From: Oikopleura dioica
Lineage: Eukaryota; Animalia; Chordata
Direction of reading: 5' to 3'
NCBI GenBank assembly: GCA_907165135.1
Contig: OU015568.1
Location: forward strand, 7,874,001 to 7,938,000
Length of the DNA: 64,000 bases
The notes below the pieces were generated by a model. That model did not search any database. It saw only the letters and a program-made list of their open reading frames with translations, and was not told where the DNA came from. The position numbers were made by a program, and so were the translations under genes. Position 1 is the stretch's first letter. Every line of letters begins with the position of its first letter. This document shows positions 7,909 to 57,745 of the stretch, in pieces.

Positions 7909-8807
7909 ATGATAACAGATGATGAGCTCTCTACGGGATGGGAAGGGCCGATTTGGATTTCCAAAGAGGACAGAAGCCGGCTTCCAAGATTTGAATACAT
8001 CGGGAACAACCAGTCAGGAGTAACTGAATTATACGACACGCTTTTGAACACGCGCCCTGGATGTTTTTGTACAGATGATGCTGACTGTTCAGAAAAATGC
8101 GACTGCGGAAGTTCGTATGTTTTAAATGAAGATGGGGTCGTTGTTCTGCGCCCTGGAATTCCTGGTGTTACAGGGTAGGGCTGTCTTTGATAAGTTCTTA
8201 GATTGATAGTTCAATAAAAACGAGGGTTAGCCTTTTCTGAGTGCAATATCAACTGTCCATGTCAACCGGACTGTCAAAATCGCCTAGTTCAAAAAGGCTG
8301 CGATCGCCCCCTCCGCGTCAAATATTTTGGCAGCGATAAAGGCCACGGACTCGTCGCTGAAAATGAAATCCACTCGGGCGAGTTCATTGTTGAATACATG
8401 GGCGAGTATCTCAATCTGGAGACGGTCAAGGAGAGACAAGTTTATCAAAGAGAAAATGAAAAGATGAATTATATTTTGTCGCTCAAGGAAGTCTTTGGAA
8501 ACGGAGAGGAAGAGACTGCTCACATCGGTACTGATATTTCAACAATATCAAAAATAAATCTTTTCCAGACGCTGGTCGAATGGGAAACGCAGCTCGTTTC
8601 GCCAATCACTCGTGTTCTCCTAATGCCAAACTCTACCCCGTTCGCGTTGAAAACGACATTGCCCGAATCGCCCTCTTCGCTCTCCGCTTCATCGAGCCCG
8701 GAGAGGAGATAACCTACGACTACGGAAGTGCAGAATCGACACTCAGTGATAGAAAATGTCACTGTGGCTCCCGTAACTGCAGATTATTCATGCCCTCTGA
8801 TGATTGA
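7909..8807 (+). CDS. SETMAR: SETMAR-type histone lysine methyltransferase (pre-SET, SET, post-SET; no transposase), copy 1, intact
   Basis: GCFC...DC...CDC pre-SET; ECNINCPC..DCQNRLVQKG; GEFIVEYMGE; GNAARFANHSCSPN; EEITYDYG; CHCGSRNCR. Confidence 0.85.
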
Positions 8808-8921
8808 AAAACGCTGTTATTTTTTTATTTCACACAAAGATAGTATTATATTTTCTTGAATTTCATAGGACCGTTGTTTCTTTAGAATTATGATCTGAAG
8901 TCGCGGAGGGTATTTGCGGCG
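7963..8921 (+). repeat. ~950-bp direct repeat, copy 1 (copy 2 at 14934-15880), covering most of the SET gene and its 3' flank
   Basis: Near-identical from aaagaggacagaagccgg to gagggtatttgcggcg in both copies, with scattered substitutions. Confidence 0.95.
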
Positions 8922-9245
8922 AAATACCCCCTTCTTCGGCGGCGAAAGGGGCTGGAAGTTACGTAACTTGCATCATAACACCTGTTCTCGAGACGAAAAA
9001 TAGCAAAATTTCGACATTTTTTACGTTTTTAGATTACTATAAAATATTTTTTCTAAATATTCGAAGCAAGTTAGACGTGTTTTTTGACGTAGATCCTTAT
9101 TCCTTTCAAATTTTCGATTTCGGGCGAAAATTGAGAGAGAAATGGACAGAAAACCTTGAACGGTTGCACTCAGTGCACCCCCATCACGCATAGGGTTAAC
9201 GATATTTTTTTTTATCTGATCGAGACTCTCGATTCGAAAGAGACT

Positions 9246-9836
9246 GACGCGCTTTTTTTAAGGTTGTGCAAGTTATTTCTCCCACTTTTTCATTGAAATA
9301 CCCGGAGCTTCATATATATTTGGAATCAGTGAGAAAAATCTAGAATCGTGACCTTTTTAGTTTTTCGAAAATCACTTCCGGTTTCAATTCTAGAGCCGGA
9401 AGTTAGCGAAATTTATGAGAATGGCATTCATGTGACCTATCTAACTGGAGCATAGAACATTTTCAGTCACTTGGAAGCGAAATTCAATCAAACCGCGGTC
9501 AGAACGACCAGTTAAACGAGAAAAAAAAATCGATATTTTGCATATTTTTACGAATTTCAAACTGAAAAAAGGGCGCACTAAACCAAAGGGAACCGAATCT
9601 GAACGCGATAAAATGATTTAAAACGTTCTAAGCTTCAATTTGATAGGTCACAAGCATAAAATTCCCATTAATTTCGCCAACTTCCGGCTCTAGAATCGAA
9701 ACCGGAAATGATTTTCGAAAAACTAAAAAGGTCACGGTTTTAGATATTTCTCACTGATTCCAAATATATATGGTGTTAAGGGTATTTCAAAGAAAAAGTG
9801 GGAGAAATAACTTGCACAACCTTAAAAAAGCGCGTC
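9246..9836. mobile_element. 591-bp MITE with ~195-bp TIRs (GACGCGC...GCGCGTC) and 3-bp TSD ACT
   Basis: ACT at 9243-9245 and 9837-9839. Long inverted arms. The paralogous site at 57601-57610 is empty (gagACTgcgacc on the minus strand). Confidence 0.9.
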
Positions 9837-10028: not shown

Positions 10029-13000
10029 ATGAACCCCAAAGAGAGTGATGAATCCCCTTCGTCGGATGATCATTCGGGAGTGCTTGTCATTGACGAGGGA
10101 GAATCTTCAGAGCAAGGTAAAATTAAATCCAGCTGACATATTTTCATCCAATTCCGCGTAGATATCTCCCCAATGAAAACACGGTCTGGAAGAATCAACC
10201 AGCGAGAGAAAGCAGCGACTGTCAAAACGTCTCAAAAAGATGGTAAGTCTAAATGTTTGCTCAACTTTTTAACAACTATAACTAGCACCACCATCGAATA
10301 AAGAGCCTGCTCGAACGAGATCTTCAAAAATTCATATTGATCTAACGCCAGAAAAATCACAGGCGACCACGCAAGAGAGTTTGGAAGATTCTCAAAGACT
10401 ATCTCAACTGAGCCGTTACGAGATGATGGAACGAGCTGCTGAGTTTTCGCAGCCTTCACCCTACTTCAAATCGCCGAAGAAGACTTCTAACAAATCATCC
10501 AACTCGAAGCTGGCCTCAGATCTTGATCCCGACCAACCAAGTAAGCGACCAAACAAATATTGAAAATAATCTCGAATTATAGCGCCGATTCCCCAACGAA
10601 AGACAAGATTTGCGAAGGAATCAACTGAGATCTCCCCTGAAATACCGTTACCGGAGCTTCCCCAATCTCAAGAGAGCACGGCTGGCTGGGAAACTCAGGA
10701 AACTCAATTTTCCCAATTGAGCCGATATGAGATGATGGAGCGAGCTGCTGAGTTTTCTCAAAGCACAACTGACGCTACTCCAGATAAAAATCGCACAGAG
10801 CACTCGCCTAAAACACCAAGAGCGGGAAAGAAGCAAAACAAAGCTGTAGAATCATCTCGTAAGTTATTGATTCTTTTACTAGATCCTTACCTTCTGTTTA
10901 GCAAAAGCCACGCACTCTCCGAGAAAAACTCAATCGGGAAAAGCGATAAGCGACGATCCCCTCGAAAGGATTGAAAAATTGGCCCAGGCTGCTCTTGCGT
11001 CTTCACAATCTTCGGAGGATACTCATGCATCCGAAGAAGGGATCGCTGGAATTTCCTTATCAGTCAGTGGTGAACTACTCATTAATGAGGTGCCTTCGGA
11101 TCCACAGATCTCCGTCTCCGTCAGCGGTGAACTTTTCAATAATGAGCCACAGCCAATGGATACTACGCAGATTCCCCAGCAAGAAGAAGAGGAAGCGAAC
11201 TCCTCTCAAGGCTCCTCCGTCTACGAAACGCCTGAAAAGAGTCTACCGAAAACGCCCAGTAAGACTGATCAATCAGCACCCGCTACACCTCCACAGCCCT
11301 CGAGAAAGCTTCGTCGAAGCCTCTTCAATGAAAATCAGGAAGAAGAACCGATGGAGTCCCCAGACATAATCATGTCATCCTCGGGAGATACGAAAGGAAG
11401 ATCAAAAAGGTCGAAACAAAAGATAATTGGTCACAGGTTTCTGGAGAGACGCTACGAGAGACTGAAGGGAGAAAAAGGAGAACTCACGATGTGCTGAACT
11501 TATGCGCCGAAGAGTCTCAAGAAGAAAAGTCGCAAGAAGAGATAAACCAGACTCAGCGAGTGGGCGATCTTTTAAACCACACAGCGCTTGCTCTCGACTC
11601 TCAACAGTCAACACAAGCAAGTCAAGCTCGACAAGAGTCAACATCAGCAACTCAAATTCAACCTCAACAAGAGTCACAAGGGACTAATGAAAAATATTTT
11701 ACGCCTCCCACTTCTCCAACCTTGGAGCAAACGTCAGCGTCTCAGAAGACTTTCGATGAGGATTTAGATGATGATTACTTTGCGAAACTCAAATCGCCGA
11801 CGAGCAAAGCTGAAACACAGAAAATTAACAAACAAGCAGATCAGGCAAAAAAGCAAAAAAGAGTTAATAGAAAAATGCCGAGATCGAGAGCAAAACCAAC
11901 GCGTGATGAGGTCAATGAATCATTGGCCAGAGCCTGTCGAAAAGCACAAGTTGGCGGTATTAGTAGACGTCTGGAATTCGCGAGGGCTTTTATTTCAAGA
12001 AGATACCGAGCACGAGATTCGAGCGATCAACAGCCCTTGAATCGAGAACTCGAAAAAGCGATTTCGTGGGAGCCAAAAGTACCGAATGTGAATTTTTCGA
12101 AGCCCGTTCCAGGATCATCAACCCGTTTCAAAAAGCCTTTTCCAGTAGCGGAAAAGCCTGCAAAAGAAAAACCGGGACCTTCGAAATCTAAAGCTTCCAA
12201 ATCGAAAAGTCAGCAACGCTCGCAGCCACGAGAAGAGCAGGAGTCAGCTCATAATTGGTCGCAGCAAGCTTTGTTCGATGAATCTGCGGAGGATCGACAA
12301 GCGCTATCGCCGGAACATGGTCAGTCCCCATCTGCGCCAATTGACAGAGAGGCCGTTCGCGAATTTATGTTTCCCACCTCAAACAAGAGAAAGCTTCAGA
12401 CTCCAGAAAAGGACGCGCAGGGCAAAGCAAGCGCTAAACATCAAGCAGCGAAAAGGAGAAAGCACGTGAAGGAAAATAAAACGCCTAAGAAAAGCGCTTC
12501 AAAGCCGACGATTCTTAAGCCAGCTGTGGATATCACCATTGCTCGTCGTCCAGGAAGAGATGCCCTGAGCGAGATTTCTGACTTGTCTTCTGCATTTGAT
12601 AATGACACTCCAATAAGAGGCGTCGGAAAGATGAATCAAAGTCAAAAGAAAGCTAGCAAAGAAAAGAGTGCGAAACCGTCGGGAAAGAGGCATGACGAAG
12701 CGGAGAATCAACCAACGTGCAGCAAGAATTTAACACCTCCAGCGATGCCACCAGATGTTGATCTTTCTAGCTTCTTGAACTCGAGCGAGGATGAGGAAGT
12801 TCGTCGACCGCAAAGTCGTCCTCGGAGACGAAATGGATCGCCAACAGCTAGCATGCCGAAGCTCACCAAATTACGATCACCAGAGAAGTCACCATCGCCA
12901 TCTAAATCAAAAAAGAAGTCGATTCAGATGAAGAAAAAACATCCAAAAATAATCCCTTCTGCAGCTCGAAAGCCTCCGAGAAGCATCACTTCGTCCGTGG

Positions 13001-14266
13001 AGACAAGGGATCCGCGAGAAGTATATGATGAGAAAACAATCGTCATCAAAGATGTAAAGAACAGTAAGGGTAGAATTGGATTCAGGCTCAGCGAAAATAG
13101 CTTAGCAGGAATCCACATCAGCGAAGTTGTCCCGGGGTCGTTAGCAGATAAAGCTGGTCTTCGTGCTGGAGATACTCTCATTTGCTTCAACGGTGTGAGA
13201 TGCTCCGTCAAGAGCAAAATCAAGCTGTCTATACTGCTACCAGTCATTATCGAATCTGCTTCGAAAGACTTCGAATTCACAGTTCTTCGCGATGTACCCG
13301 ACCAGTATTCGGAGGAAGAAGACGTTGACACATCGGAAGTTTCAGATATTTCAGATGCAGAGTCTGATGTCCAAGTACAAAACATTGATTCAGGAAATGA
13401 TTTAAAACTGTAAATTCACAAATATGGTATCTTTGATGAGACCATCACAGTAATAATCTGTTAATTCTTTTATATCATTACCAAAGATGGCAACGTGAGC
13501 AGAGTAGAGACTCCTGTTGATACGAATCCAGAGTATGGAACATTCGACAACACTGCTAACGTGACCAATCTTACTTCCGAGAGAAACGCTGCTGAAACTA
13601 CTAATCCTGAGTACGAGACATTTGACCGATCTTTTAATATCACGGCTGGTACCTCCGAACAGCCTGGGACTGCGTTATCTGGCTCTTCTTCAGATGTTTC
13701 CTACACAAGATTGGCACGCAAGTACGATGAAGGCTCTTCAATTGCTGATTCTGTTAAAACGAAAAAACGAAAAGTCGGAATGAGCCACTACTTGAATCCG
13801 AGGCCAGAATCTATTGCTTCGAATCAACGAGAAAAGGTAACGATTTGAAATCATGAAAGATTACTCTAATTTCATTTTAGTCTGACGAGTCAGCCAGTGA
13901 AGTGTCAGTCCAAACATCTTCGCGGGCAGCGACAAGCCGACCAGCTTCGCGGGCAGAGTCAGTCCGACCAGCTTCGAGGGCAGCGTCAAGCCGAATTAGC
14001 CGGGCTCCAAGCACATCAACCCTTGGCCCGCAGAAAAGAAAGAAGTGGACGGACGTGAGCACTTTATAAATGATTTAACTCTTTCATTGTTATGAATTTA
14101 GGATGAGGACGCCTTATTGATTGTTGGCCTCAATCAATACGGAAAAGACTGGATAAAGATCTGGAACAAGTTTTTCCGTGAAACGAAGAGGACGAATATC
14201 AACCTCAAAGACAGACACCGTCAGCTTCTCAAACAAGGCGACCCACGGGTGAAGGAAAAATACTAA
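10029..14266 (+). CDS. Large disordered protein with PDZ domain and C-terminal TRF/telobox-like Myb domain, copy 1 (1-bp frameshift at A-run 11404-11408)
   Basis: PDZ: IKDVKNSKGRIGFRLSENSLAGIHISEVVPGSLADKAGLRAGDTLICFNG. Last exons: KRKKWTDDEDALLIVGLNQYGKDWIKIWNKFFRETKRTNINLKDRHRQL. Five A's here versus six in copy 2. Confidence 0.8.
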
Positions 14267-14513
14267 ACCCCTTTCCTTCTTCCTCACTGTATATAGTTCA
14301 CATTTTCACCCACATCACCTCACTTTCATAGTCTTAATTCACTGCCTTTATCGCCTAACTATGATTTTAAATTAACGTTTTTTCCATTTTAGATTGCATC
14401 AGACTGAGAGCTCACTCGAACCGCCAAAAATTTCATCAAGGATGAAAGAAGATCTTTTGAAAAATTAAAATACTGCCAATTTGTAAACTTCAATAAAACT
14501 GACATGTTAAAAA

Positions 14514-14926
14514 TTATTCAGCATGGTTAATACCGGTATGATTATACCGATTCTGTGTATGAGCCTTCAGAGGATTCGTTTGTCTTCCTTGATGGCATTG
14601 AAAAGGAGCTTGAGGATAAATGTTTAGGCAAGGAAGTCAGATATTGTAGCATATTTTGTAGCGCTTGTAGATTTTTTCCGAAGAAAAGCCTGGTCTAGCA
14701 GTTGAAATCGGTTCCGGATCGGGGGTCATTTCATGTGCCTTTGCGAGTTGGACAAAAAGCTACGTTCTTTCTTTGGACATCAACGAGTTATGTTCCGAAT
14801 GCACGAGTAAAAATGGAAAGAAGAACGATTCACTTGTAGGCAGCGCCGTAGACAACGCGGGTAGTTGCCTTCATATAGGAATATTCGATTTTGTCTTGCT
14901 AAACCCTCCGTATGTCGTGACAACCA
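14514..14926 (+). pseudogene. N6AMT1: Truncated N6AMT1/HEMK2 copy
   Basis: Retains YEPSEDS and FDFVLLNPPYVVTT. Lacks the ATGcgtccaacg start of the intact copy, has a short insertion near the 5' end, and breaks at 14926 into the SET repeat. Confidence 0.88.
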
Positions 14927-14933
14927 TCCTAAA

Positions 14934-15767
14934 AAAGAGGACAGAAGCCGGCTTCCAAGATTTGAATACATCGGGAACAACCAGTCGGGAGTAACTGAAT
15001 TATACGACACGCTTTTGAACACGCGCCCTGGATCTTTTTGTACAGATGATGCTGACTGTTCAGAAAAATGCGACTGCAGAAGTTCTTTCGTTTTAAATGA
15101 AGATGGGGTCGTTGTTTTGCGCCCTGGAATTCCTGGTGTTACAGGGTAGGGCTGTCTATAATCATTTTTATCAACTGGAGTTGGATAAAAGAACAAGGGT
15201 TAGCCTTTTCTGAGTGCAATATCAACTGTCCATGTCAACCGGACTGTCAAAACCGCCTCGTTCAAAAAGGCTGCGATCGCCCCCTCCGCGTCAAATATTT
15301 TGGCAGTGATAAAGGCCACGGACTCGTGGCAGAAAATGAAATCCACCCGGGCGAGTTCATTGTCGAATACATGGGCGAGTATCTCAACCTGGAGACGGTC
15401 AAGGAGAGACAAGTTTATCAAAGATGAATTATATTTTATCGCTGAAAGAGGTCTTTGGAAACGAAGAAGAAGAGACTGTTCACATTGGTATTGATTTTTC
15501 AACAATAGCAAAAATAAATCTTTTCCAGACGCTGGTCGACTGGGAAACGCAGCTCGTTTCGCCAATCACTCATGCTCTCCTAATGCCAAACTCTACCCCG
15601 TTCGCGTTGAAAACGACATTGCCCGAATCGCCCTCTTCGCTCTCCGCTTCATCGAGCCCGGAGAAGAGATCACCTACGACTACGGAAGTGCAGAATCGAC
15701 CCTCAGTGATAGAAAATGTCACTGTGGCTCCCGTAACTGCAGATTATTCATGCCTTCTGATGATTGA
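14934..15767 (+). pseudogene. SETMAR: 5'-truncated, frameshifted SETMAR-like copy 2
   Basis: No start exon. A 13-bp deletion (agaaaatgaaaag) at 15423/15424 relative to copy 1 shifts the frame inside the SET domain. Confidence 0.85.
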
Positions 15768-16567
15768 AAAACGCTGTTATTTTTTATTTCACACAAAGAT
15801 AGTATTATATTTTCTTGAATTTTATAGGACCGTTGTTTCTTTAGAATTATGATCTGAAGTCGCGGAGGGTATTTGCGGCGCTTCGGTAAAATTGACCAGA
15901 TGGAGTGTACCGCCGGAAGAGCTTGAATTGGGATCCTCGACCTCCTCTCAGTCTTTTTGAGCTATATTTTTGATAAAATGAATTCATTAATCAATTCTGT
16001 TTCACTAAGGTCGCTAGGATTAGACATTATGAGCTTTCCTGGATTGATTTCTCTGTTTTGGCACTTCATTTGTATATGTTGCTGCCTTGGCTCTCTGCTT
16101 ATCACTTATTGAGTTAAACTTTATATTAATACTTACATAAACATTATAAAATGAAACCAATTCACCTATTTCTTTTGAATCAAAGTGATAACAATTATGA
16201 AATAAATGAAAAAAATCTAACTCTGCCTTGTAATTGAGTCGTAAATGCCAGACATTGTTCTGAAAAACTGCGCTGAAACGCAAGTCGTCGAAAAAATTAT
16301 AGTGATAATTGAGAATCTCATTCTTCTGTGATTTTGTGATTTGTGAACTTCAGTCCTCAATTTTATAGCAGCGATTGTTTTCCTTTTTTGTTGGTAGAGA
16401 ATGTTGACAAACATGACTTGTTCGGCATCTTTTTTAAATTTATAATTGCAGTTATTTTTCTGGCGAAAAGACCGTGCTATTAACACGATGTTAATTCTAT
16501 TTTTCATTGTTTATTATTGAGCGTTCTGGAGCCCCGCTCGTCATTTACAAGTTTACACTATCATAGA

Positions 16568-45835: not shown

Positions 45836-48800
45836 ATGCGGAGTATGACGAGTTTACTTTTACTGCTGCAGGTGATTCTTGCTTCTCAGTCCATTATTAT
45901 TTCGAATTCTGACTCCTGCTCAATACCTGTCAATGGAACCTGTCAAGGCGGCTTCGCTCTGGGCACGCTGAGAGATAGAGAGCGACTAACTTGCCAGCGG
46001 CGAGCGGACACACAGTCAGAGAAAGAGGCCGATTGCGCGGCAAAGTGTAAAGTTCGTTGTGATGAGATGAACTGCCAACTTAGCGGCTGGTCTGACTGGT
46101 CTCCTTGCTCAAGAAAATGTTACTATATTTACTTTATTTTCAAGGATTTTATTTAGTAACATTTTATAGAACTTGTCTCCCTTCTTCGAAATATCGAACA
46201 AGAGAAATCCGAAAATATGATCCTCCTTGCGACTTTGTCGATTTATTCGAATCGAAAGAATGTCAAGATATGGCAGACTGTGGTGAAATACGAGAAGAAG
46301 TAAAGAATTCCGACTGGAGTCCGTGTCTAGGTGAATCAGGTGCTACTGGGCTACAGAATCTGACTCTGTCGAGCGTGAGAGGGTCGATCGTTGTCAGTAG
46401 ATCTTGCTCGACGTCATCGCAGTGTGAGGTTTCGCAGTGGTCGGAATGGAGTTCTTGTCAGTGGTCCAAGATTGGGATTAAATTTTTCAAGGTCGAAGTA
46501 TGACTTGACATGAATTAATTAGTGTTTCAATCCTGAGAGAAGTTTCTCGACCCTCTTCAAGTTCGAAAACGCTACCCAACGAGTTGGATCGATCAGGAAA
46601 GCCATTTTATATTTATTCATATATTCATAATTTCAAATCAATTTGAAACAATCAATTATGCAACTTCAGTCTTTTTAAAATGGCCAAAATAGAATATTGC
46701 ATCTTGTCCTTCATTTGAAGAGCAGAAGATTTGTTCGAATGAAGATATCCCGTCTTGGAAAACGGGATTATGGACAAATTGCGTAGCGAAAAATCAAACT
46801 TGTGGGGATGGCTTTAAGTTTCGCAACGTCTGGTGCGGCGTTAACTCGAGTTCTGAGTTAACAATCTTGCCTGATGATAAATGTGAATCTTCAATTCCAC
46901 TTTCACGAGTTTCTTGTTCCATTCCATGCCAAACTGAGTGTATTTATGCAAGCTGGTCAGCCTGGTCAACTTGCTCACAATCCTGCCTTGACCCTTCAAA
47001 AGGAAGCACTGCGCCAGTACAAACTCGCTCTAGGGTGCTTCTGAACAAGGAAGACTCACTGACTTGCAATCAAAATGAGTACTATCGCTCATGCTTTCCG
47101 CCACTTTGCTCACTTCTCTCAGAAACGTCCCTTGAACCCGTAGAAAACGACTGTATATACTCAGATTGGAGCTCCTGGACACGCTGTCCGACATCTTGCG
47201 AAGAGAGTGGTCTTCAGAACCTCGGGGAAAACATACGGAGCCGAACAAGATCTGTTCTAGGTCAAGGTTCTAACAAAACATGTGTCGAGCAGACTCAAAA
47301 TCTAAAGAGTTGTCCAGCACCAAGTTGCACAACATTTTCCTGGAAGACTCAAGAATGGTCGTCCTGCCGAAGAATACATCGAGACCCACTTGTTGATGAT
47401 CCAGATGGCATTTGTTACAAAGGAACCAAAACACGAGCCATTTCCTGCCTGAACTCTCGTGGAGAGTCTTCATATCAATGTCCAGAAGATAGAAAGCCGG
47501 CAGAATCAATGTCCTGTACTATCAGTTGCAGACAATCGGCAGAGTTGAGCGATTGGTCAAGCTGGTCAGATTGCAATTGCATCAAAAATCAACAAGGTTC
47601 GAAAACAAGGAGGAGGAGAATTACAAAGCAAGCCAGTGAGCCGAAAATTGCGGATTACAATCAGACACTCTACGAGGAAACCTTTTGCAACTGCACTAGA
47701 CCAACTTTAAAGATCGGCCCTTGGAGTAAGTGTTTGATAATAAGTGGCGGAAACCCTACAAATGTCTGCAAAGGGATTCAGTATAGAAGCATTAACTGTA
47801 TCGAGTCCGAACTCGGACAAGAAGTTTCCCTCTTCAAGTGTATTGGTGAAAATACGACAGTTCTCCCATCGAGAATGCAAGAATGTCTTGGTCTCTGTGA
47901 AGCAAACGAACAAGCTAGTCGCTTTTACAAGTTGAATAATCTTGTCCAAAAGAACAACATTGAAATAACGATTCCGACTCAAGGACCACCAGTTACCTCA
48001 ACCATCACAAAAGATATCAGTGGTTATAGTGACTGTTTTCCGATTGCTGGAAATTGTGGCGAAGGAAGAAGGAAAGGTTTAAATGATCGATTTGAAATTA
48101 TATTAAACAAAGCTTGAACCAAGATCAAGACAAATTGCTCGAGGATGCTTCAGACTCGACGGAAGACCTCTTCTACGAACTGACTGTAATCTGAACTCAT
48201 ACATTCTATCTACACCGTGCACGATTCCATGTGAGGATCCACTAAACCCAGATCTGGAAGTTTGGTCTGAGTGGACTCCCTGCTCGAATTCTTGTGGATT
48301 TGGAGTTCGCAGCCGGACTAAACCATCAAGTAAATCTGTTTTATAAGTGAGCGTCTAAATATATCTTTAGCAAAAATGAAAACAGAGGCTTGCTGGACAA
48401 ATTGTTTTCGATTTCGTTGGACAACGGGTCCATGGTCAAGTTGTGAGCTGAAAGATAAAGCTATTTGCGGCACCGGTCTTCAGAGCCGCAAAGTCAACTG
48501 TTTTATGGAAGATAACGGAATCGATAAGAAAGTACAGAACCTTTATTGCAAAGAACTAAGGCGACCTTTGCAGGAAACGCTATCTTTATTAATAATTTAA
48601 GTTCTTGAACGAGTCAATCATACGTCAAATGAAATAATTGAATCAATCTTGTCAGACAGAAAATTCAATCGCTTCGCATAATGGAATTACTAATCGAATC
48701 TGAATTACAAAGCGTTAAAAAGGAACAGCAATGCAGCATCTCATGCCCTGGAGATTGTGTCGTTTCAGAATGGACAGCGTGGACACGCTGTGATTCTAGG

Positions 48801-50041
48801 TTTAGGTTCTGAAATCTTTTTGCTGATAAACGGAAAATATTTTGGGAACCTCTAAAATTGAGCTGCTCTGACTCAATCAGAAACCGTTCGCGCTCAATTC
48901 TGAGGCAGTCTTCCGTTTCAACTTGTGCCTTTGATCTAATGGAGACGGAGAGCTGCGTCGCTGGAATCAACTGCAATCAACTAAAGACAGTGTGGACAGA
49001 ATGGACTTCATGCACGTCTCAGAATGGGTGTAACAATGATGGATACAAATTTCGCTTCATGAATTGTTACAAGAACAATCAGCTGGTGGATCCCTACGAA
49101 TGTTCAAGCTCGGGAGAAGAGCTAGTCGAAAGACAAACCTGTCGCTTTGAATGTGATGTCGACTGTATAATCAGCGACTGGGGAGAATGGAGCCCCTGTC
49201 CACCTATGCCAACTTGTGGAGTTTTACAGGAAAGAGCCAAACCTCTACCATCAAATGTAACTTTTGTCATTTGACTCTAAAAAGTCAAAAAGGTCACGGA
49301 AGATCATTCAAAAATCCTCGGGATATGGAAAGGCATGTCCTAATAACTCACAACAGTCGAAACCGTGTGGTTATCGACCCTGTGTCGAGTGGATTCCTGC
49401 CGATTGGTATGCTTGTATCCCGTATTTTGGAACTTGTGGGGCTGGAGAACAGAAGCGAAGATTTAGCTGCGAGAAAAATGGACAGTTGATTCAACGAGAG
49501 CTCTGCAATCAAGTCTTCGGAACCATCGAAGATATTTTTCCGAGATCGGAGCGTGTTCAATCGTGTAATCTTTTATGCAAGAATGAAGACCTGAAAATCC
49601 CGTGGACAAGCTGGAGCGACTGTGAAAAATCATGTGGCGCTAACAAGTCTGATTTGAGAATAAGGACGCGGATAGAGACGAACATGTTAACGATGGACTA
49701 CAAGAAAATAACAGAATTCGACAATTGCACTTCTTACTGTACGTATGAAAGATCTGCAGATTCAACTTCAGCGGAAAACTTTCGCGAAGAAACTTCGGCA
49801 GCACAAGAGATGGAGACAACCAAGATCGCAAAAGTTGCACAGGAAGAATCAGCCGCCGTCAGGGTTATTCTGTGGGTTTTTCTAATTTCAGGAAACGTTC
49901 AACCTTCGATAATTAATCAAATTAAAAATACGATGATAACATTGAAAAGCAATATCTGTCACTGTCGCCTCGTCGATCGCGATATTCATGATCAATTGTT
50001 ACTACAGAAGACTCGATAGTCATCAATCCCTGCCAAGCTGA
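45836..50041 (+). CDS. THSD7: Thrombospondin type-1 repeat transmembrane protein (THSD7A/B-like)
   Basis: Signal peptide and many TSR repeats (WSDWSPCS, WSAWSTCSQSC, WTTGPWSSC..CGTGLQSRKVNC). C-terminal TM ISVTVASSIAIFMINCYYRR. Confidence 0.8.
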
Positions 50042-50131: not shown

Positions 50132-52092
50132 CTAAAGCCTTGCGAATCTATGTGCGCGCAGACAGCTAGTATTACAGAATTGAAAGTCTGAATATTTGAA
50201 GGGCGTCCCATTTATTTCTCCACCGCACTCGCTGCAGGGAACGAAAACGAGTTCTTTCTTCTTCGGCTTTTCAGCAGGTTCCTCGACTGTAGGAGTGGGC
50301 TTCTTCTTTTTCTTTGGCTTTTGTCTCTTTCTCTTCGACGGGTTTTCGCTAATTCCCGCTGGATCAGGAACTTCTGCTTTAGCCCAGTCCCACTTGTCCG
50401 GATTCGAACCTCTGAAATTCCAAAAACTTGCTCTTGCTTCGCGAACTGTACACAGACGGAATGGAGGCATCTTGTCCTTATTTTTCAACGTCGGATCTGA
50501 TCTATTCAAGAGTAGAAATTCGATCACTGGTGAAGAATTTTGCTCTGCTGCAAAATGAAGCAAAGTCTGAATAAAAAGATTAATTATTTTTGTAGAGAAA
50601 TATTTTAACTGACCATCTCATTCTTGAGGGGCACATTGATGATTTCTTCAGGAGAGTTGATTTCAGCGAAATACGATGCTAGTTTTTGAACGTCTCCACT
50701 TCGCACGCCGGTAAAGAGCAAGTCTAGTCTTGCCCTTACTTCTTCGTCAATCGTTTCCGAGCATTCTGAGCTGTCCAATCTCGCTTTTCTCGATTTCGAA
50801 ATTTTTGCTTTCTTCGGCGAAAGTTTGACCTTTGCCATTTCTTTTTCCACTTTATCATCTTCGTCGTCTGAAATAACATCCAAATGAGGGTTTGCGGTAA
50901 TTTTTGGTTTTGCTTTCGGTTCAAGTATTTCGGTATTTCTCCTCGGGCTTCGTTGTTTTTTGAACTGTTCTACTTGTGCTTCGGTATGAATTCGCAATGA
51001 AAAGATCTTCTGAAATACTCGTTGTGTTTCCTCGAAGCGAGGCTTGTGCATCGGCACCATCAGTGGTCTTATAATTGTTTTGTTCTCAACGACGCGGTGA
51101 AGAGGCTGGAGAATCACAGATTTCTGATGTTTCGGCGCACGACAGAAGATCGTCGCGCATTTAGCTAGTGTTGCTCCCCACTCGGTAATCTGCTCCTCAA
51201 TTTTTCTACACAATTCTTTTTCATTTTCTCGTCGTAATTGAGCACCCATGGACTTTGGCTTCATTCCTGCACGAATATTATCAGTCGCTTAGGAATCCTT
51301 CTACCTTGATTATCCCGAGTTGACTGCGCAGTGCCTCGTTTCGCCCGGACAACGTATTTCTTTATGCATTTGTGGAGCAGGGGCTTTCCATTTTCGAATA
51401 TGCAACCAGCAAAGGCGCCGGCAGAGAATAGTAAAATTGCATCATGTCGTTTCCCTTCAAATGCTTTACTTTTTGAATATTTTTGGATCATACCTTCAGG
51501 AGCAATTTTTTCGGTGAAGGATCGGCGGGTCATTACCAGGCGTTTGAGAATTTCTAATTCCGACAAGAACTCGTTTCGATGGGCGACAAGACCTCGATAA
51601 GCTGTTATTCGTTCTTTGTCTTCGTTGAAAAAATACATTTCCTAATGCACATTCAACGGATATGTTCAGAGACGAAAATATACCTGCTGAGCACGACCTC
51701 TAAATCGCATTTCAGGAGCATCAAGATTCGCAGAAGTCGCTATTTCCTCGTCTCCAGACCAATCCGACCCCTAGGAACACTCTTTATTTATTTCAGATAC
51801 ACCTTTTTACCTCCTCAGAGCTATCCGAGTCACCATCGCTCTCGTTTTCTCCGCTTCCCGATTTTGCTTTGAGCTTCGATTTTAGCAGGTTTCTGTGCTC
51901 AGCTGACTTGTAGTGTTGCACTTGATCTTCCCGAGTGACAAGCTCAACGGAGCATGTTCTACAGTAGAATTCGGATTCAGTCGGAATTGACACTTGACTT
52001 GCTTCGGCTTCTCCATTTGGAATCTCTTTTCCGATAACAAGGTTCTCTAACTTGCCCTTCCAAAACTCATCCCAAATCGGGAACGAAGACAT
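50132..52092 (-). CDS. ANKZF1: ANKZF1/Vms1 (C2H2 finger, VLRF1, ankyrin, C-terminal Zn finger)
   Basis: FYCRTCSVELVTREDQVQHYKSAEHRNLLK; LFSAGAFAGCIF; HKCIKKYVVRAKRGTAQSTRD; LHFAAEQN; CSECG...FQFCNTSCLRAH. Confidence 0.93.
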
Positions 52093-52181: not shown

Positions 52182-52897
52182 TTAGTGTTCATTTATTGAC
52201 TCTTTTGATGAATGAGTGATCTTGAGCAAGTATAAATACTCTCGCCCCGCTTTTCTTTCAATAACAATATTCATCAAGTAACTTCGTTCATTCAAAAACT
52301 CGCGTATTTCTTCCAGAACGTTCTCTCTTATCGCTATTAGGTACAAACAACCAGAGTTATTCATCAACTTCAGTGCTTTTGGCAAAAGATTGGCGAATAA
52401 AAGTTCAGTTCCATTATTTCCACCGCTCCATGAAGCACTCAGATCTTGGTCTTTTTGTGATTTGTGGAGCTCTTCACTGGTTGTCACGACATACGGAGGG
52501 TTGAGCAAGACAAAATCGAATAGACCGGTACGAAGGCAACTACCCGCGTTGTTTACGGCGCTGTCTACAAGTGAATTGTTCTTCTTTCCATTTTTACTCG
52601 TGCATTCGGAACATAACTCGTTGATGTCCAAAGAAAGAACGTAGCTTTTCGTCCAACTCGCAAAGGCACATGAAATGACTCCCGATCCAGAACCGATTTC
52701 AACTGCTAGACCTGGCTTTTCTTTGGAAAATTATCAACAAGTGCTACAAAACACGAGGTATATCTAAATTCCTTGCCTAAACATTTATCCTCAAGTTCCT
52801 TTTCAATGCCATCAAGAAAGACAAAAGAATCCTCAGAGGGCTCATACACAGAATCGGTATAATCATACCATGCTGAATAATCTGGCGTTGGACGCAT
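52182..52897 (-). CDS. N6AMT1: N6AMT1/HEMK2 methyltransferase (intact copy)
   Basis: MRPTPDY...VYEPSEDSFVFLD; VEIGSGSG; FDFVLLNPPYVVT; WSGGNNGTE; ERKAGREYLYLLK. Confidence 0.95.
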
Positions 52898-53150
52898 TCT
52901 TAATTTTTAACATGTCAGTTTTATTAGAATTTACAAATTGGCAGTATATTAATTTTTCAGAAGATCTTCTTTCATCCTTGATGAAATTTTTGGCAGCTCG
53001 AGTGAGCTCTCAATCTGATGCAATCTAAAATGGAAAAGACGTTAATTTAAAATCATAGGTAGGCGATAAAGGCAGTGAATTATGAGTATAAAAGTGAGGT
53101 GATGTGTGTGAAAATGTGAACTTTATACAGTGAAAAATAAGGAAAGGGGT

Positions 53151-56100
53151 TTAGTATTTTTCCTTCACCCGTGGGTCGCCTTGTTTGAGAAGCTGACGGT
53201 GTCTGTCTTTGAGGCTGGTATTCGTCCTCTTCGTATTACGGAAAAACTTGTTCCAGATCTTAATCCAGTCTTTTCCGTATTGATTGAGGCCAACAATCAA
53301 TAGGGCGTCCTCGTCCTAAATTCATAACAATAAAAGAGTTAAATCATTTATAAAGAGCTCACGTCTGTCCACTTCTTTCTTTTCTGCTGGCCAAGGGTTG
53401 AAGCACGGCTAATTTGGCTTGACGCTGCCCTCGAAGCTGGTCGGACCGATCCTGCCCGCGAAGCTGGTCGGCTTGACGCTGCCTGCGAAGATGTTTGGAC
53501 TGACACTTCACTGGCTGACTCGTCAGACTAAAATGAAGTTAGAGTAATCTTTCATGATTTCAAATCGTTACCTTTTCTTGTTGATTCGAAGCAATAGATT
53601 CTGGCCTCGGATTCAAGTAGTGGCTCATTCCGACTTTCCGTTGTTTGGTTTTTACAGTATCAGCGATCGAAGAGCCTTTATCGTACTTTCGTGCCAACCT
53701 TCTGTAGGAAACATCTGAAGAAGAGCCAGAGAACGCAGGCTCAGGCTGTTCGGAGGTACCAGCCGTGACATTAAAAGATCGATCAAATGTCTCGTACTCA
53801 GGATTTGTCGTATCAGCAACGTTTCTCTCGGACGTATGATTGGTAACGTTAGCAGTGTTGTCGAATGTTCCATACTCTGGATTCGTATCAACAGGAGTCT
53901 CTACTCTGCTCTCGTTGCAATCTTTGGTAATGATTTAAAAGAATTAATAGATTGTCACTATGAATTATAGTCTATGATGGACCATCATTGATGGTCTCAT
54001 GAAAAATATCATATTTGTGAATTTACAGTTTTATATCATTTCCTGAATCGATGTTTTGTTCTCGAACATCAGACTCTGCATCTGAAATGTCTGAGACTTC
54101 CGATGTGTCAACGTCTTCTTCCTCCGAATACTGGTCGGGTACATCGCGAATTACAGTGAATTTGAAGTCTTCCGTTACCGATTCGGCAATGATTGGTAGC
54201 AGCATAGACATCTTGATTTTGCTCTTGACGGAGCATCTTATACCGTTGAAGCAAATGATAATATCTCCAACACGAAGACCAGCTTTATCTGCTAACGACC
54301 CCGGGACAACTTCGCTGATGTGGATTCCTGCTTCGCTATTTTCGCTGAGCCTGAATCCAATTCTACCCTTACTGTTCTTTACATCTTTGATGACGATTGT
54401 TTTCTCATCATATACTTCTCGCGGATCCCTTGTCTCCACGGACGAAGTGATGCTTCTCGGAGGCTTTCGAGCTGCAGAAGGGATTATTTTTGGATGTTTT
54501 TTCTTCATCTGAATCGACTTCTTTTTTGATTTAGATGGCGATGGTGACTTCTCTGGTGAGCGTAATTTGGTGAGCTTCGGCATGCTAGCTGTTGGCGATC
54601 TATTTCTTCTCCGAGGACGACTTTGCGGTCGACGAACTTCCTCATCCTCGCTCGAGTTCAAGAAGCTAGAAAGATCAACATCTGGTGGCATCGCTGGAGG
54701 TGTTAAATACTTGCTGCACGTTGGTTGATTCTCCGCTTCGTCATGCCCCTTTCCCGACGGTTTCGCACTCTTTTCTTTGGTAGCTTTCTGTTGACTTTGC
54801 TTCATCTTCCCGACGCCTCTTATTGGAGTGTCATTATCAAATGCAGAAGACAAGTCCGAAATCTCGCTCAGGGCATCTCTTCCTGAACGACGAGCAATGG
54901 TGATATCCAAAGCTGGCTTAAGAATCGTCGGCTTTGAAGCGCTTTTCTTAGGCGATTTATTTTCCTTCTCGTGCTTGCTCCTTTTCGCTGCTTGATCTTT
55001 CGCGCTTGCTTCGCCCTGCGCGTCCTTTTCAGGTGTCTGAAGCTTTCTCTTGTTTGAGGTGGGAAACATAAAATCGCGAACGTCCTCTCTGTCAATTGGC
55101 TCCTGGTCTTCTCGTGGCTGCGAGCGTTCCTGACTTTGCGATTTTGAAGCTTTAGATTTCGAAGGTCCCGGTTTTTCTTTTGCAGGCTTTTCCGGTACTG
55201 GAAAAGGCTTTTTGAAACGGCTTGATAATCCTGGAACGGGCTTCGAAAAATTCACATTCGGTACTTTTGGCTCCCAAGAAATCGCATTTTCGAGTTCTCG
55301 ATTCAAGGGATCGCTCGAATCTCGTGCTCGGGTTCTTCTTGAAATAAAAGCCCTCGCGAATTCCAGACGTCTACTAATACCGCCAGCTTGTAATCTTCGA
55401 CAGGCTCTAGCCAACGATTCGTTGACCTCATCACGCGTTGGTCTTGCTCTCGATCTCGGCATTTTTCTATTAACTCTTTTTTGCTTTTTGGCCTGATCTG
55501 CTTGTTTGTTAATTTTCTGTGTTTCAGCATTGCTCGTCGGCGATTTGAGTTTCGCAAAGTAATCATCATCTAAATCCTCATCGAAAGTCTTCTGAGTCGC
55601 TGACGCTTGCTCAAAGGTTGGAGAAGTGGGAGGCGTGAAATATTTTTCATTAGTCCCTTGTGACTCTTCTTGAGGTTGAAGTTGAGTTGCTGAAGTTGAC
55701 TCTTGTCGAGCTTGAGTTGCTTGGGTTGACTGTTGTGAGTCGAGAGCAAGCGCTGTGTGGTTTAAAAGATCGCCCACTCGCTGGGTCTGGTTTATCCCTT
55801 CTTGTGACTTTTCTTCTTGAGAATCTTCGGCGCATAAGTTCAGCGCATCGTGAGTTCTCCTTTTTCTCCCTTCAGTCTCTCGTAGCGTCTCTCCAGAAAC
55901 CTGTGACCAAGTATCTTTTGTTTCGACCTTTTTTGATCTCACTGTCGTGTCTCCTGAGGACGCCATGATTATCTCCGGGGACTCCATCGGTTCTTCCTGA
56001 TTTTCATTGAAGAGGCTTCGCCGAAGCTTTCTCGAGGGCTGTGGAGGTGTTGCGGGTGCTGATTGATCAGCCTTACTCGGCGTTTTCGGTAGACTCTTTT

Positions 56101-57306
56101 CAGGCGTTTCATAAACGGAGGAGCCTTGAGAGGAGTTCGCTTCCTCTACTTCTTGCTGGGGAATCTGCGTAGTATCCATTGGCTGTGGCTCATCATTGAA
56201 AAGTTCTCCGCTGACGGAGAGGGAGATCTCTGGATCCGAAGGCACCTCATCATTGAGTAGTTCACCACTGACTGATACGGAAATTGCAGCGATCCCTTCT
56301 TCGGATCCCTGAGTATTCCCAGAAGATTGTGAAGACGCAAGAGCAGCCTGGGTCAATTTTTCAATCCTTTCCAGGGGATCATCGTTTATCGCCTTCCCGG
56401 ATCGGGTTTTTCTCGGAGAGTGCGTGGCTTTTGCTAAACAGAAGGTAAGGATTTGGTAAAAGAATCAATAACTTACGAGATGATTTGACAGCTTTGTTTT
56501 GCTTCTTTCTCGCTTTTGGTGTTTTAGGCGAATGCTCTGTGCGGTTTTTATCTGAGTTAGGTTCAGCTTTGATTTGAGAAAACTCAGCAGCTCGCTCCAT
56601 CATCTCATATCGGCTCAGTTGGGAAAGTTGAGTTTCCTGAGTTTCCCAGCCATCCATGCTCTGCTGTGATGGGGGAAGCTCCGGTAAAGGTATTTCAGGG
56701 GAAAGCTCAGTTGATTCTTTCGCAGATCCCGTCTTTCGTTGCGAACTCGTTGCTATAATTCGTGTATATTTTCAACATATGTTTAATCGCTTACTTGGTT
56801 GGTCGGGATCAAGATCTGAGGCCAGCTCCGAGTTTGATGATTTGTTAGAAGTCTTCTTCGGCGATTTGAAGTAGGGTGACGGCTGCGAAAACTCAGCAGC
56901 TCGTTCCATCATCTCGTAACGGCTCAGTTGAGATAGTCTTTGAGAATCTTCCAAGCTCTCTTGCGTGGTCGCTTGTGATTTTTCTGGCGTTAGATCAATA
57001 TGAATTTTGGAAGATCTCGTTCGAACAGGCTCTTTATTCGATGATGGTGCTAGTTTCAGTTGTTAAAAAGTAGAGCGAACATTTAGACTTACCATCTTTT
57101 TGAGACGTTTTGACAGTCGCTTCTTTCTCTCGCTGGTTGATTCTTCCAGACCGTGTTTTCATTGGGGAGATATCTACACGGAATTGCATGAAAATAAGTC
57201 AGCAGGCTATAATTTTACCTATCTCTGAAGATTGACTCTCGTCAATGAGAAGCACTCCAGAATTATCATCCGACGAAGGGGATTCATCTCTCTCTTTGGG
57301 GTTCAT
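53151..57306 (-). CDS. PDZ + telobox-like Myb protein, copy 2 (no frameshift seen)
   Basis: 777-aa open central exon with PDZ. Last exons KRKKWTDDEDALLIVGLNQYGKDWIKIWNKFFRNTKRTNTSLKDRHRQL. Confidence 0.85.
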
Positions 57307-57404
57307 TTTCAATCCGATAACGCACCGTCTGAACAAAAAAATATTGAATCGTTTCTCAACTCTTTTCGTAAAGAGGTCAAGTGCCGACGGTCGAGCAGCA
57401 AAAA

Positions 57405-57745
57405 TAAGTTTTTGAATCTAGAAAGAAAGAAAACAATTCTCGAAAATCGCAGTCTCTCGATCAGATAAAAAAATTGTCGTTTAGAGTAGAAAAAAAAAGT
57501 AGAAAATGACGACAAGCAAAAAGAGTTTTCGAATCTAGAAAGAAAGAAAACAATTCTCGAAAATTGAGTATTTTCAAATGATGCTCCGACTAGCCTTGGT
57601 CGCAGTCTCTCTCGATCAGATAAAAAAAAAATTATCGTTTAGACATGGACGAATAAAAAAGCAGAAAATGATGCTCCGACTAGCCTTGGTCGCAGTCTCT
57701 CTCGATCAGATAAAAAATTATCGTTTAGACATGGACGAATAAAAA
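57405..57745. repeat. Mosaic tandem repeat upstream of PDZ/Myb copy 2
   Basis: Unit aaatgatgctccgactagccttggtcgcagtctctctcgatcagataaaaa..ttatcgtttagacatggacgaataaaaa occurs twice. gaatctagaaagaaagaaaacaattctcgaaaat also occurs twice. Confidence 0.85.

What the first reader, a model, noticed from the sequence alone, without database searches (positions are those of the whole stretch)
10029..14266. Unusual PDZ + telobox-type Myb protein, present in two diverged copies
Seen: the final exons encode KRKKWTDDEDALLIVGLNQYGKDWIKIWNKFFRETKRTNINLKDRHRQL. Established: this follows the single C-terminal Myb of TRF1/TRF2-type telomere-binding proteins (KR..W..EED..L..GV.KYG.G.W..I...RT.V.LKDRWR), except that the last Trp is His. 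The rest is >1000 aa of disordered sequence with SQ/TQ clusters (SQEEKSQEEINQTQ...SQQSTQASQ), many S/T-P sites, RxL-type motifs (RKLRRSLF, SRRLEF) and a PDZ domain. I see no TRFH domain and know of no animal PDZ + telobox protein. Inference: a lineage-specific telomere- or chromatin-binding, cell-cycle/ATM-regulated scaffold, possibly a highly remodelled TRF or meiotic telomere factor. PDZ and Myb are nearly unchanged between copies while linkers carry indels (a 31-aa block only in copy 1).
Basis: partly seen in the sequence, partly recalled or inferred. Interest (0 to 1): 0.72.

Follow-up and report, generated by a model that had tools for sequence, protein, structure and literature searches.

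The report
Oikopleura PDZ plus telomere-type Myb gene
The tiny sea animal Oikopleura dioica has a multi-copy gene that joins a protein-docking PDZ domain to a DNA-binding domain of the kind vertebrates use on telomere repeats; it is the best candidate telomere binder in this genome, but nobody has tested that.

Summary
Window 10029-14266 (+) is an 8-exon gene of Oikopleura dioica (Okinawa assembly, annotated as PAR.g10616). It encodes a roughly 1260-aa, mostly disordered protein with one PDZ domain and a C-terminal single Myb domain. A second, inverted copy (53151-57306, minus strand, 93% nt identity) has an intact 1256-aa reading frame.

- Copy 1 has an A-run one base shorter (11404-11408), which breaks the frame upstream of the PDZ.
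- Between the copies the PDZ is 88% identical, no better kept than the rest of the protein.
- The family has about 10 loci in this genome, six of them with the Myb exon.

PDZ and Myb are joined through a GA..AG intron. Its donor, position and phase are the same in the Bergen-lineage ortholog (912 aa, 43% identity over the PDZ-to-Myb part). The junction itself has no RNA coverage.

The Myb is telobox/TRF-type by motif, by profile neighbours and by fold ranking. It is the only such domain found in a genome that carries TTAGGG telomeres. No TRFH domain was detected, and no PDZ+telobox protein was found outside Oikopleura.

Telomere binding remains an inference (about 0.45). ATM regulation is poorly supported; a conserved D-box-like motif is a better cell-cycle lead.

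The scan already reported this family at another locus near the end of chromosome 1 (s1-383384).

The parts
10029..14266 (+). Copy 1 of the PDZ + telobox-Myb gene (public model PAR.g10616 = P0001). Exons: 10029-10116, 10162-10242, 10286-10540, 10583-10858, 10902-13393, 13487-13836, 13881-14054, 14102-14266.
   Evidence: for the reading and the model; for RNA joints 13836/13881 and 14054/14102.
11404..11408 (+). A5 run, one base shorter than in copy 2 and five other paralogs. It shifts the frame upstream of the PDZ and Myb, either as a real lesion or as a homopolymer assembly error.
   Evidence: The same A5 is present at locus L003 (models P0005/P0003).
10402..10760 (+). Two copies of a 17-aa motif (SQLSRYEMMERAAEFSQ), 309 nt apart. 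The motif also occurs in a Tara metatranscriptome homolog (P0027).
   Evidence: repeat D8.
12544..12618 (+). The most conserved linear motif outside the domains (RRPGRDALSEISDLSSAFDNDTPIR). Its core, RDALSEISD (12556-12582), fits the APC/C D-box pattern RxxLxx[ILVM]x[NDE].
   Evidence: nearly identical in Bergen P0008; P0027. It is the only match to the pattern in each protein.
12243..12335 (+). 93-nt (31-aa) block present in copy 1 and absent from copy 2.
   Evidence: Locus L003 aligns in a single piece across this stretch, which suggests that copy 2 lost the block; this was not checked base by base.
13036..13296 (+). PDZ domain, with an R-I-G-F carboxylate-binding loop.
   Evidence: loop read.
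13394..13486 (+). Intron 5, non-canonical GA..AG, phase 1. It links the PDZ exon to the Myb-bearing exons. If it is retained, the frame stops at TAA 13411-13413.
   Evidence: the same CAG|GAAATGATTT donor, position and phase in Bergen. GA-AG introns are common in O. dioica (PMC7072748). No RNA coverage of this junction.
13525..13626 (+). Two NPEY-x-TFD motifs (13525-13548 and 13603-13626), conserved in Bergen as NPVYETFD and NRVYETFD.
14034..14266 (+). Telobox-type Myb domain, split by intron 7 (14055-14101). Helix 3 carries RTNINLKDRHR, followed by a conserved tail GDPRVKEKY.
53151..57306 (-). Copy 2, an intact CDS of 3771 nt (1256 aa). Exons: 57306-57219, 57173-57093, 57049-56795, 56752-56477, 56433-54043, 53921-53572, 53527-53363, 53315-53151.
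   Evidence: (no internal stop).
8920..9836 (.). Two interspersed repeats abutting the 5' end of the copy-1 duplicated unit: a roughly 280-bp element (8920-9199) and a roughly 590-bp fold-back element (9245-9836).
   Evidence: dozens of copies genome-wide; inverted repeat I9.

Best explanation
This is a real, transcribed, Oikopleura-specific gene family. It encodes a long, mostly disordered nuclear protein that ends in a single TRF-type (telobox) Myb domain and carries one PDZ domain about 200 residues upstream.

Most likely mechanism (inferred, not shown): the Myb domain binds duplex TTAGGG repeats, as the TRF1/TRF2 Myb does. The PDZ domain, in place of the missing TRFH domain, docks partner proteins. 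A conserved D-box-like motif limits the protein's abundance to part of the cell cycle.

The family spreads by segmental duplication and is in birth-and-death turnover. In this window copy 2 is intact. Copy 1 is transcribed but, as assembled, frameshifted.
For: GENE AND ARCHITECTURE (shown).
- PDZ and Myb are called by Pfam.
- The architecture is conserved in the Bergen-lineage ortholog P0008: 43% identity over the PDZ-to-Myb part and 36% over the longer alignable stretch. The domains are about 50-55% identical and so better kept than the linkers.
- The GA..AG linking intron has an identical donor, position and phase in both lineages.
- The Myb exons are spliced in poly-A RNA.
- A Tara transcript-derived homolog (P0027) joins the N-terminal/middle motifs to the Myb on one molecule.

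TELOBOX CLASS.
- The helix-3 motif RT-x4-KDR-H-R aligns on TRF2's RTAVMIKDRWR.
- A profile of the family ranks TRF2 and TRF1 as the best full-length single-domain PDB matches.
- The nearest non-Oikopleura domains among 1.84 billion proteins mostly carry KD[RK][WFY]R and include multi-telobox proteins of the ascidians Phallusia and Clavelina.
- A profile of those neighbours hits TRF1/TRF2/Terfa at 70-75 bits.
- The AF2 model (pLDDT 79.5) is closest to the TRF1 and zebrafish TRF2 Myb domains.

CONTEXT.
- The genome ends in TTAGGG arrays.
- The six family exons are the top six telobox-profile matches in the genome. The next matches are SNAPC4-, CHD1- and CDC5L-like.
- The exact pattern RTxxxxKDRWR occurs nowhere in the genome.
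- O. dioica lacks NHEJ (PMC12426944), which could relax constraint on a TRF2-like protein.

D-BOX. RDALSEISD / RDALSDITD is conserved in three lineages.
Against: - There is no binding, localisation or phenotype data.
- The margin between TRF and c-Myb in the family's own PDB profile search is small (32.7 vs 32.3 bits), and the Foldseek E-values are weak (0.04).
- The neighbour profile A3 was drawn from hits to the family, so its high score on the family is partly circular.
- The third Trp is His, and an Asn replaces the Ala/Val that, from my memory of the TRF-DNA structures, touches DNA. Specificity may therefore differ.
- The search for another TRF was exon-wise and could miss a split or divergent domain. 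The TRFH search had no positive control.
- The PDZ-to-Myb junction has no RNA coverage.
- Several paralogs, and the Tara homolog, lack the PDZ.
- dN/dS between the two copies is 0.45 overall and about 1 in the PDZ.
Confidence: 0.45

Rival explanations
1. The protein is a non-telomeric chromatin or transcription factor. A telobox-derived Myb with altered specificity (or a SANT-like histone or protein-binding role) tethers a PDZ scaffold to chromatin at internal sites, under cell-cycle control through the D-box-like motif.
For: The family Myb scores only at Pfam's generic threshold. Trichomonas MYB21 and c-Myb R1 score about as well as TRF. The third Trp is replaced by His. The conserved D-box-like and NPxY-TFD motifs have no counterpart in shelterin proteins. 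From general knowledge, telobox proteins such as yeast Tbf1 also act at non-telomeric sites.
Against: The K-D-R-x-R recognition-helix motif and the basic N-terminal arm are kept in all lineages. The nearest neighbours are telobox-type. No other candidate duplex TTAGGG binder was found in this genome.
Confidence: 0.3
2. Copy 1 is a transcribed pseudogene and the Okinawa expansion is mostly decaying segmental duplicates, so what this window shows is gene-family debris rather than a working system.
For: Copy 1 and locus L003 are frameshifted. Several loci lack the PDZ and/or the Myb, or are fused to neighbouring genes in the public models. dN/dS is 0.45 overall and about 1.1 in the PDZ. Duplicates carry fragments of flanking genes.
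Against: Copy 2 has an intact 1256-aa frame. The architecture and several short motifs are conserved between the Okinawa and Bergen lineages. In-frame indels dominate: 3, 6, 9 and 93 nt. The Myb has dN/dS 0.22. The copy-1 3' exons are spliced and polyadenylated in wild plankton RNA. The A5 run could be a homopolymer assembly error.
Confidence: 0.15
3. These are two genes, not one. A PDZ protein ends at TAA 13411-13413, and a separate downstream Myb gene (operon-style) starts in exon 6. The GA..AG intron would then be an annotation artefact.
For: No RNA read covers the junction. The donor is non-canonical. The retained-intron reading ends in GNDLK in both lineages: four codons after the donor in Okinawa, but about 30 codons after it in Bergen.
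Against: Exon 6 has no start codon at its conserved 5' part; ATG in copy 1 is ATT in copy 2, and it is out of frame. Yet the NPEY-TFD motifs there are conserved as protein. Donor sequence, position and phase are identical in Bergen. GA-AG introns are frequent in this species. Independent gene models in two assemblies join the parts. The Tara transcript P0027 joins upstream motifs to the Myb.
Confidence: 0.1

Closest known systems
Vertebrate TRF1/TRF2 (TERF1, TERF2, zebrafish Terfa): shelterin duplex-TTAGGG binders
   Same: A single C-terminal Myb with a basic N-terminal arm and helix-3 RT-x4-KDRxR. These are the best full-domain PDB sequence matches and the best fold matches. The host genome has TTAGGG telomeres.
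   Different: No TRFH dimerisation/docking domain was detected. A PDZ domain is present instead. The third Trp is His. The loop between helices 1 and 2 is one residue shorter. Similarity is restricted to about 55 residues.
Ascidian multi-telobox proteins (Phallusia mammillata LOC100177249, 708 aa; Clavelina lepadiformis LOC143462858, 1042 aa), uncharacterised
   Same: They are tunicate proteins with telobox Myb domains 38-40% identical to the Oikopleura domain. One of them has Tyr at the third-Trp position.
   Different: They have two or three Myb domains and an N-terminal helical region, and no PDZ. There is no similarity outside the Myb, so orthology is unproven.
Fungal Tbf1/Teb1/Tay1-type TTAGGG-binding factors
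   Same: Telobox motif with an aromatic variant (DLKDRFR). They appear among the near neighbours of the family profile.
   Different: Different overall architecture; many have two Myb domains; no PDZ.
TERB1 (meiotic telomere-nuclear envelope adaptor with a C-terminal Myb)
   Same: From my own knowledge, not tested here: a long protein with a single C-terminal TRF-like Myb and CDK-regulated linker regions.
   Different: TERB1 has N-terminal ARM repeats and a TRF1-binding motif. None was detected here, and no TERB1 hit appeared in any search.
Paralog near the end of chromosome 1, reported earlier by this scan (s1-383384)
   Same: Same family and same PDZ + telobox architecture. Locus C4:14.49 Mb is among the six Myb-bearing copies.
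   Different: A different locus with a rearranged internal order. The present window holds an inverted pair, one member of which is frameshifted.

Membership tests
TRF1/TRF2 (shelterin TRF family) | C-terminal telobox Myb domain (helix-3 KDRWR-type motif) | tested here: met
   The motif is KDRHR, with His in place of Trp.
TRF1/TRF2 (shelterin TRF family) | TRFH homodimerisation/docking domain (Pfam PF08558) | tested here: not met
   No PF08558 hit in P0001, P0003 or P0008 at E<=0.1. None in the six-frame genome search, but that search had no positive control.
TRF1/TRF2 (shelterin TRF family) | Sequence-specific binding to duplex TTAGGG repeats and telomeric localisation | not testable with these tools
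   Needs EMSA, ChIP or imaging.
TRF1/TRF2 (shelterin TRF family) | Orthology to tunicate or vertebrate TRF genes beyond the Myb domain | tested here: not met
   BLASTP of P0008 against the ascidian P0135 aligns only the Myb.
Telobox-class Myb domains (TRF/Tbf1/plant TRP type) | Three-helix Myb fold, with telomere-repeat binders as the nearest sequence and structure neighbours | tested here: met
   AF2 model with three helices, pLDDT 79.5. Foldseek places TRF-type domains (human TRF1/TRF2, zebrafish TRF2) at ranks 1-4 and 6 of the PDB list. The margins are small.
PDZ domain proteins | Pfam PDZ profile above the gathering score, and a carboxylate-binding x-Phi-G-Phi loop | tested here: met
   PF00595 38.5 bits vs 23.2; PF17820 36.3 vs 27. 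Loops RIGF (Okinawa) and KIGL (Bergen) were read.
APC/C D-box substrates | RxxLxx[ILVM]x[NDE] degron in a disordered region, conserved among orthologs | tested here: met
   One match per protein, conserved in Okinawa, Bergen and the Tara homolog. This is sequence-level only; degradation was not tested.
Processed or unprocessed pseudogene (copy 1 only) | Frame-disrupting lesion confirmed in reads | tested here: inconclusive
   A5 vs A6 in the assembly. No reads covered the site.
Transposable element cargo gene | Discrete shared termini, TIR/LTR or TSD, and a nearby transposase | tested here: not met
   Other copies share longer and variable flanks that include fragments of neighbouring genes. 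Introns are retained. The flanking 960-bp direct repeat exists only twice in the genome.

The most novel reading that the evidence does not exclude
Oikopleura has replaced the canonical TRFH+Myb shelterin anchor. This PDZ+telobox family would be its only duplex-TTAGGG binder, with a PDZ domain taking over the peptide-docking role of TRFH, in a chordate that has lost NHEJ. That would be a re-invented chromosome-end protection complex, with gene copies turning over rapidly.
Probability: 0.3. Interest if true: 0.8.

Novelty: new variant of a known kind. Interest (0 to 1): 0.55.

Why it matters
Shelterin's DNA-binding subunits are thought to be built the same way (TRFH + Myb) across vertebrates. 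Little is known about end protection in tunicates, and in my searches nothing in larvaceans. Oikopleura has TTAGGG telomeres but no NHEJ, the pathway that TRF2 mainly guards against. A telobox protein whose partner-docking module is a PDZ domain would show how end-protection machinery is rebuilt when that constraint changes. It would also give a concrete, clonable candidate for the first larvacean telomere protein. If it is not telomeric, it is still an undescribed way of tethering a PDZ scaffold to DNA.

Tried and rejected
- TRANSPOSON CARGO: rejected. There are no common termini, and flanks of variable length are shared among copies.
- PROGRAMMED FRAMESHIFT at the A-run: rejected by eye. There is no X XXY YYZ heptamer in the zero frame.
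- SUBTELOMERIC LINKAGE of the window copies: rejected. They lie at 7.88 and 7.93 Mb of a 17.1-Mb contig, with no TTAGGG arrays in the window or the fetched loci. Three other loci do sit at or near contig ends.
- TRFH SEARCH of the whole genome and a search of the genome with the ascidian protein P0135: both empty. Both are uninformative, because nothing rang in the controls or even on the family's own exons.
- SINGLE-SEQUENCE AF2 of P0008:540-912: failed (pLDDT 35.6).
- ESM ATLAS LOOK-ALIKES: none usable.
- N-TERMINUS of the ascidian protein against the PDB: no TRFH hit.
- RNA READS: three O. dioica raw RNA runs gave zero reads at 97% likeness, probably another lineage. The frameshift and the PDZ-Myb junction therefore stay unverified.
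- The look-up of encoding contigs for P0003: nothing on record.
- PFAM on ORFs downstream of copy 1: nothing significant.
- JOINED MODEL: no search tool was given a joined spliced model. Exons were searched by window reference, and the public whole-protein models P0001, P0003 and P0008 stood in for the joined product. The joined copy-2 CDS was built only inside scripts, to test frame integrity and count motifs.
- No complex prediction was run, because no binding claim is made.
Full report
ORGANISM AND LOCUS

The window is C1:7874001-7938000 of a 64.3-Mb assembly. Earlier notes of this scan name the species as Oikopleura dioica. I confirmed this: the protein encoded at 10029-14266 corresponds, apart from the frameshift workaround described below, to the public model Oidioi.mRNA.OKI2018_I69.PAR.g10616.t1 (P0001, 1266 aa). 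Introns are tiny (42-47 nt), as expected for this species.

GENE STRUCTURE

Copy 1 has eight exons: 10029-10116, 10162-10242, 10286-10540, 10583-10858, 10902-13393, 13487-13836, 13881-14054 and 14102-14266.
- Contigs of a poly-A marine plankton metatranscriptome (X1) match copy 1 over 13674-14313 with no other letters along the laid pieces, and are spliced at 13836/13881 and 14054/14102.
- One base at the exon-7 start (13881) reads C instead of T.
- Three O. dioica raw-read RNA runs gave no reads at all, probably because they come from another lineage. The 5' two thirds of the gene therefore have no RNA evidence here.

THE PDZ-TO-MYB LINK

The long exon's frame runs into TAA at 13411-13413. 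No GT..AG intron keeps the frame. The only solution is a GA..AG intron, 13394-13486, phase 1. Four things support it.
- Public models of three Okinawa paralogs use it (P0001, P0003, P0006).
- The Bergen-lineage ortholog P0008 (912 aa; FN653062.1) has an intron at the same place and in the same phase. Its donor, CAG|GAAATGATTT, is almost identical, although the proteins are only 43% identical over the PDZ-to-Myb part and 36% over the longer alignable stretch (exon mapping).
- Exon 6 has no usable start codon at its conserved 5' part. An out-of-frame ATG in copy 1 is ATT in copy 2. Yet its NPEY-TFD motifs are conserved as protein.
- GA-AG introns are unusually common in O. dioica (PMC7072748).

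A Tara Oceans transcript-derived homolog (P0027) also joins the upstream motifs to the Myb on one molecule, although it lacks the PDZ. I rate 'one gene' at about 0.9, but the junction itself is not covered by reads.

THE TWO COPIES

The inverted copy spans about 52478-57606, with 93.3% nt identity.
- Projecting the exon model onto it gives an intact CDS of 3771 nt (1256 aa) with no internal stop.
- Copy 1 is not intact as assembled. Its A-run at 11404-11408 has five A's, whereas copy 2 and five other paralogs keep the frame there (A6 or GA5). One further locus (L003) shares the A5.
The public model P0001 steps around it with an artificial intron, which replaces about 30 residues by out-of-frame sequence.
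- Whether this is a true lesion or a homopolymer error could not be settled.
- The other coding indels are all multiples of three (3, 6, 9 and 93 nt).
- dN/dS is 0.45 overall, 0.22 in the Myb and about 1.1 in the PDZ (16.5 non-synonymous vs 4.5 synonymous changes).
- At protein level the PDZ plus tail is 121/137 identical, with the changes clustered in its second half. The Myb exon is 51/54 identical.
- So 'domains nearly unchanged' holds for the Myb but not for the PDZ.

FAMILY SIZE AND MODE OF SPREAD

The 5.1-kb unit has about 10 loci: C1 at 6.08, 7.88 and 7.93 Mb; the start of C2; C4 at 5.12, 14.48 and 14.49 Mb; C5 at 5.67 and 5.73-5.75 Mb; and the small contig C7. Six of them keep the Myb exon, all with KDRHR.
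- Several loci lack the PDZ and/or the Myb, or are rearranged. Public models fuse some of them to neighbouring genes.
- Homology to copy 1 always stops at 9837 and 14926. Other copies, however, share longer upstream flanks with each other, including fragments of a neighbouring gene (P0005).
- Introns are retained.
- This is segmental duplication with birth-and-death turnover, not transposition or retroposition.
- Upstream of copy 1 sit two interspersed repeats. A 960-bp direct repeat, present only twice in the genome, brackets the whole insertion. Another note of the scan treats that rearrangement (s1-400480).
- The Bergen locus also has a tandem second copy.

WHAT KIND OF MYB

Pfam calls only a generic Myb, at threshold. 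More specific evidence follows.
- A phmmer/hmmsearch of the domain against PDB sequences aligns it end to end with TRF2. The basic arm KRKKW aligns on KKQKW, and RTNINLKDRHR on RTAVMIKDRWR.
- In the profile search, TRF2 (32.7 bits) and TRF1/Terfa (31.8) are the best full-length single-domain matches. c-Myb R1 (32.3) and Trichomonas MYB21 are close behind.
- A profile search of 1.84 billion proteins finds further Oikopleura-complex sequences first.
- After those come domains that mostly carry KD[RK][WFY]R. They include multi-telobox proteins of the ascidians Phallusia and Clavelina and many 'DLKDRFR' proteins.
- None of 38 such hits scanned has a PDZ or a Pfam TRFH.
- A profile of 17 of these neighbours hits TRF1/TRF2/Terfa at 70-75 bits, well above plant TBP1 and single c-Myb repeats. 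The neighbourhood is therefore TRF-type.
- An AlphaFold2 model of the domain (three helices, pLDDT 79.5) is nearest to the TRF1 and zebrafish TRF2 Myb domains (TM by target 0.82-0.88, 36-39% identity). The E-values are weak, as expected for 55 residues.
- The His at the third-Trp position is fixed in all six Okinawa copies and in Bergen. One Bergen paralog has Tyr.
- F, Y and A occur at this position in other neighbours. The substitution is therefore within the range of the class.

IS THERE ANOTHER TRF IN THE GENOME?

The genome ends in TTAGGG arrays.
- The back-translated pattern RT-x4-KDRWR occurs nowhere. RT-x4-KDR[HY]R occurs six times, all in this family.
- The neighbour profile finds the six family exons first (42-56 bits). 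The next matches are SNAPC4-like, CHD1-like and CDC5L-like Myb/SANT exons.
- The TRFH model found nothing, but it rang in no control either.
- Within the limits of exon-wise searching, this family is the only telobox-class Myb in the genome.
- O. dioica lacks NHEJ (PMC12426944), which gives a rationale for a remodelled end-protection protein.
- I found no paper on larvacean telomere-binding proteins.

OTHER CONSERVED FEATURES
- The best-conserved linear motif is RRPGRDALSEISDLSSAFDND(T/S)PIR (12544-12618). Its core fits the APC/C D-box pattern and, from memory, resembles the cyclin B box. It is the only such match in each ortholog.
- Also conserved are two NP-x-Y-x-TFD motifs, HY(L/I)NPRPESIAS, an N-terminal LVIDEG...ISPM-TRS, and the post-Myb tail GD-RVK.
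- SQ/TQ sites are enriched in the Okinawa protein (35 vs 15.6 expected) but not in Bergen (12 vs 8.9). S/T-P sites are only mildly enriched.
- The ATM argument is therefore weak. The D-box-like motif is the better lead for cell-cycle control.

VERDICT
- The protein works like a telobox DNA binder carrying a PDZ docking module.
- It is not a member of the TRF family as defined by TRFH + Myb, and orthology to the ascidian telobox proteins is unproven.
- The telomere function is the best-supported mechanism (about 0.45) but is wholly inferred.
- The same family was already reported by this scan at a chromosome-1 end locus (s1-383384). This window adds four things: the inverted pair, the frameshifted but transcribed copy, the conserved GA-AG link, and the genome-wide 'only telobox' result.

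PROCEDURAL NOTE

Exons were searched by reference, and public models P0001, P0003 and P0008 served as whole proteins. The joined copy-2 CDS was built only inside scripts, to test the frame and count motifs.

Noticed in passing
window 7963-8921 and 14934-15880: A 960-bp direct repeat (93-99% identity), present only twice in the genome, brackets copy 1 together with two interspersed repeats. It looks like a target duplication made when the 5.1-kb unit was inserted. Another note of the scan (s1-400480) covers it.
   Followed up: partly
window 8920-9199 and 9245-9836: Two interspersed repeat families lie just upstream of copy 1: a roughly 280-bp element with dozens of copies at 84-91% identity, and a roughly 590-bp fold-back (MITE-like) element with 219-nt inverted arms. 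Copies of the latter match in both orientations.
   Followed up: partly
window 14555-14994: The gene just downstream of copy 1 has ORFs with YEPSEDSF and FVLLNPPYV motifs. By eye these recall an N6AMT1/HemK2-type methyltransferase, but Pfam gave nothing significant. Its 5' part is co-duplicated with the PDZ-Myb unit next to copy 2.
   Followed up: partly
window 57401-57753: Short tandem duplications (units of 86-117 nt) of the 5' boundary sequence of the duplicated unit lie upstream of copy 2.
   Followed up: no
window 13394-13413; L010 about 8158-8250: If intron 5 is retained, the PDZ exon reads on through a conserved GNDLK in both Okinawa and Bergen. In Okinawa the frame stops two codons later (GNDLKL-stop); in Bergen it runs on for about 25 more codons. 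The donor region GGAAATGATTT is conserved, so a PDZ-only isoform is conceivable.
   Followed up: no
L010 1-810 and 6001-9149 (Bergen scaffold FN653062.1): The Bergen lineage also has a tandem second copy. Its last exons encode the same C-terminal residues as P0008 (100% over the final 55), and each copy is followed by an NFACT-R_1 gene. CBY24704 (P0014), on the same scaffold, carries two Myb copies with KDRYR.
   Followed up: partly
window 46867-50019 and 50605-51264: A TSP1-repeat gene lies on the plus strand, and an ORF with a bVLRF1 (release-factor-like) domain on the minus strand, between the two copies. Coq4 is at 61742-62251 (minus), and PRKCSH-like and ADH-like ORFs lie elsewhere in the window.
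   Followed up: no
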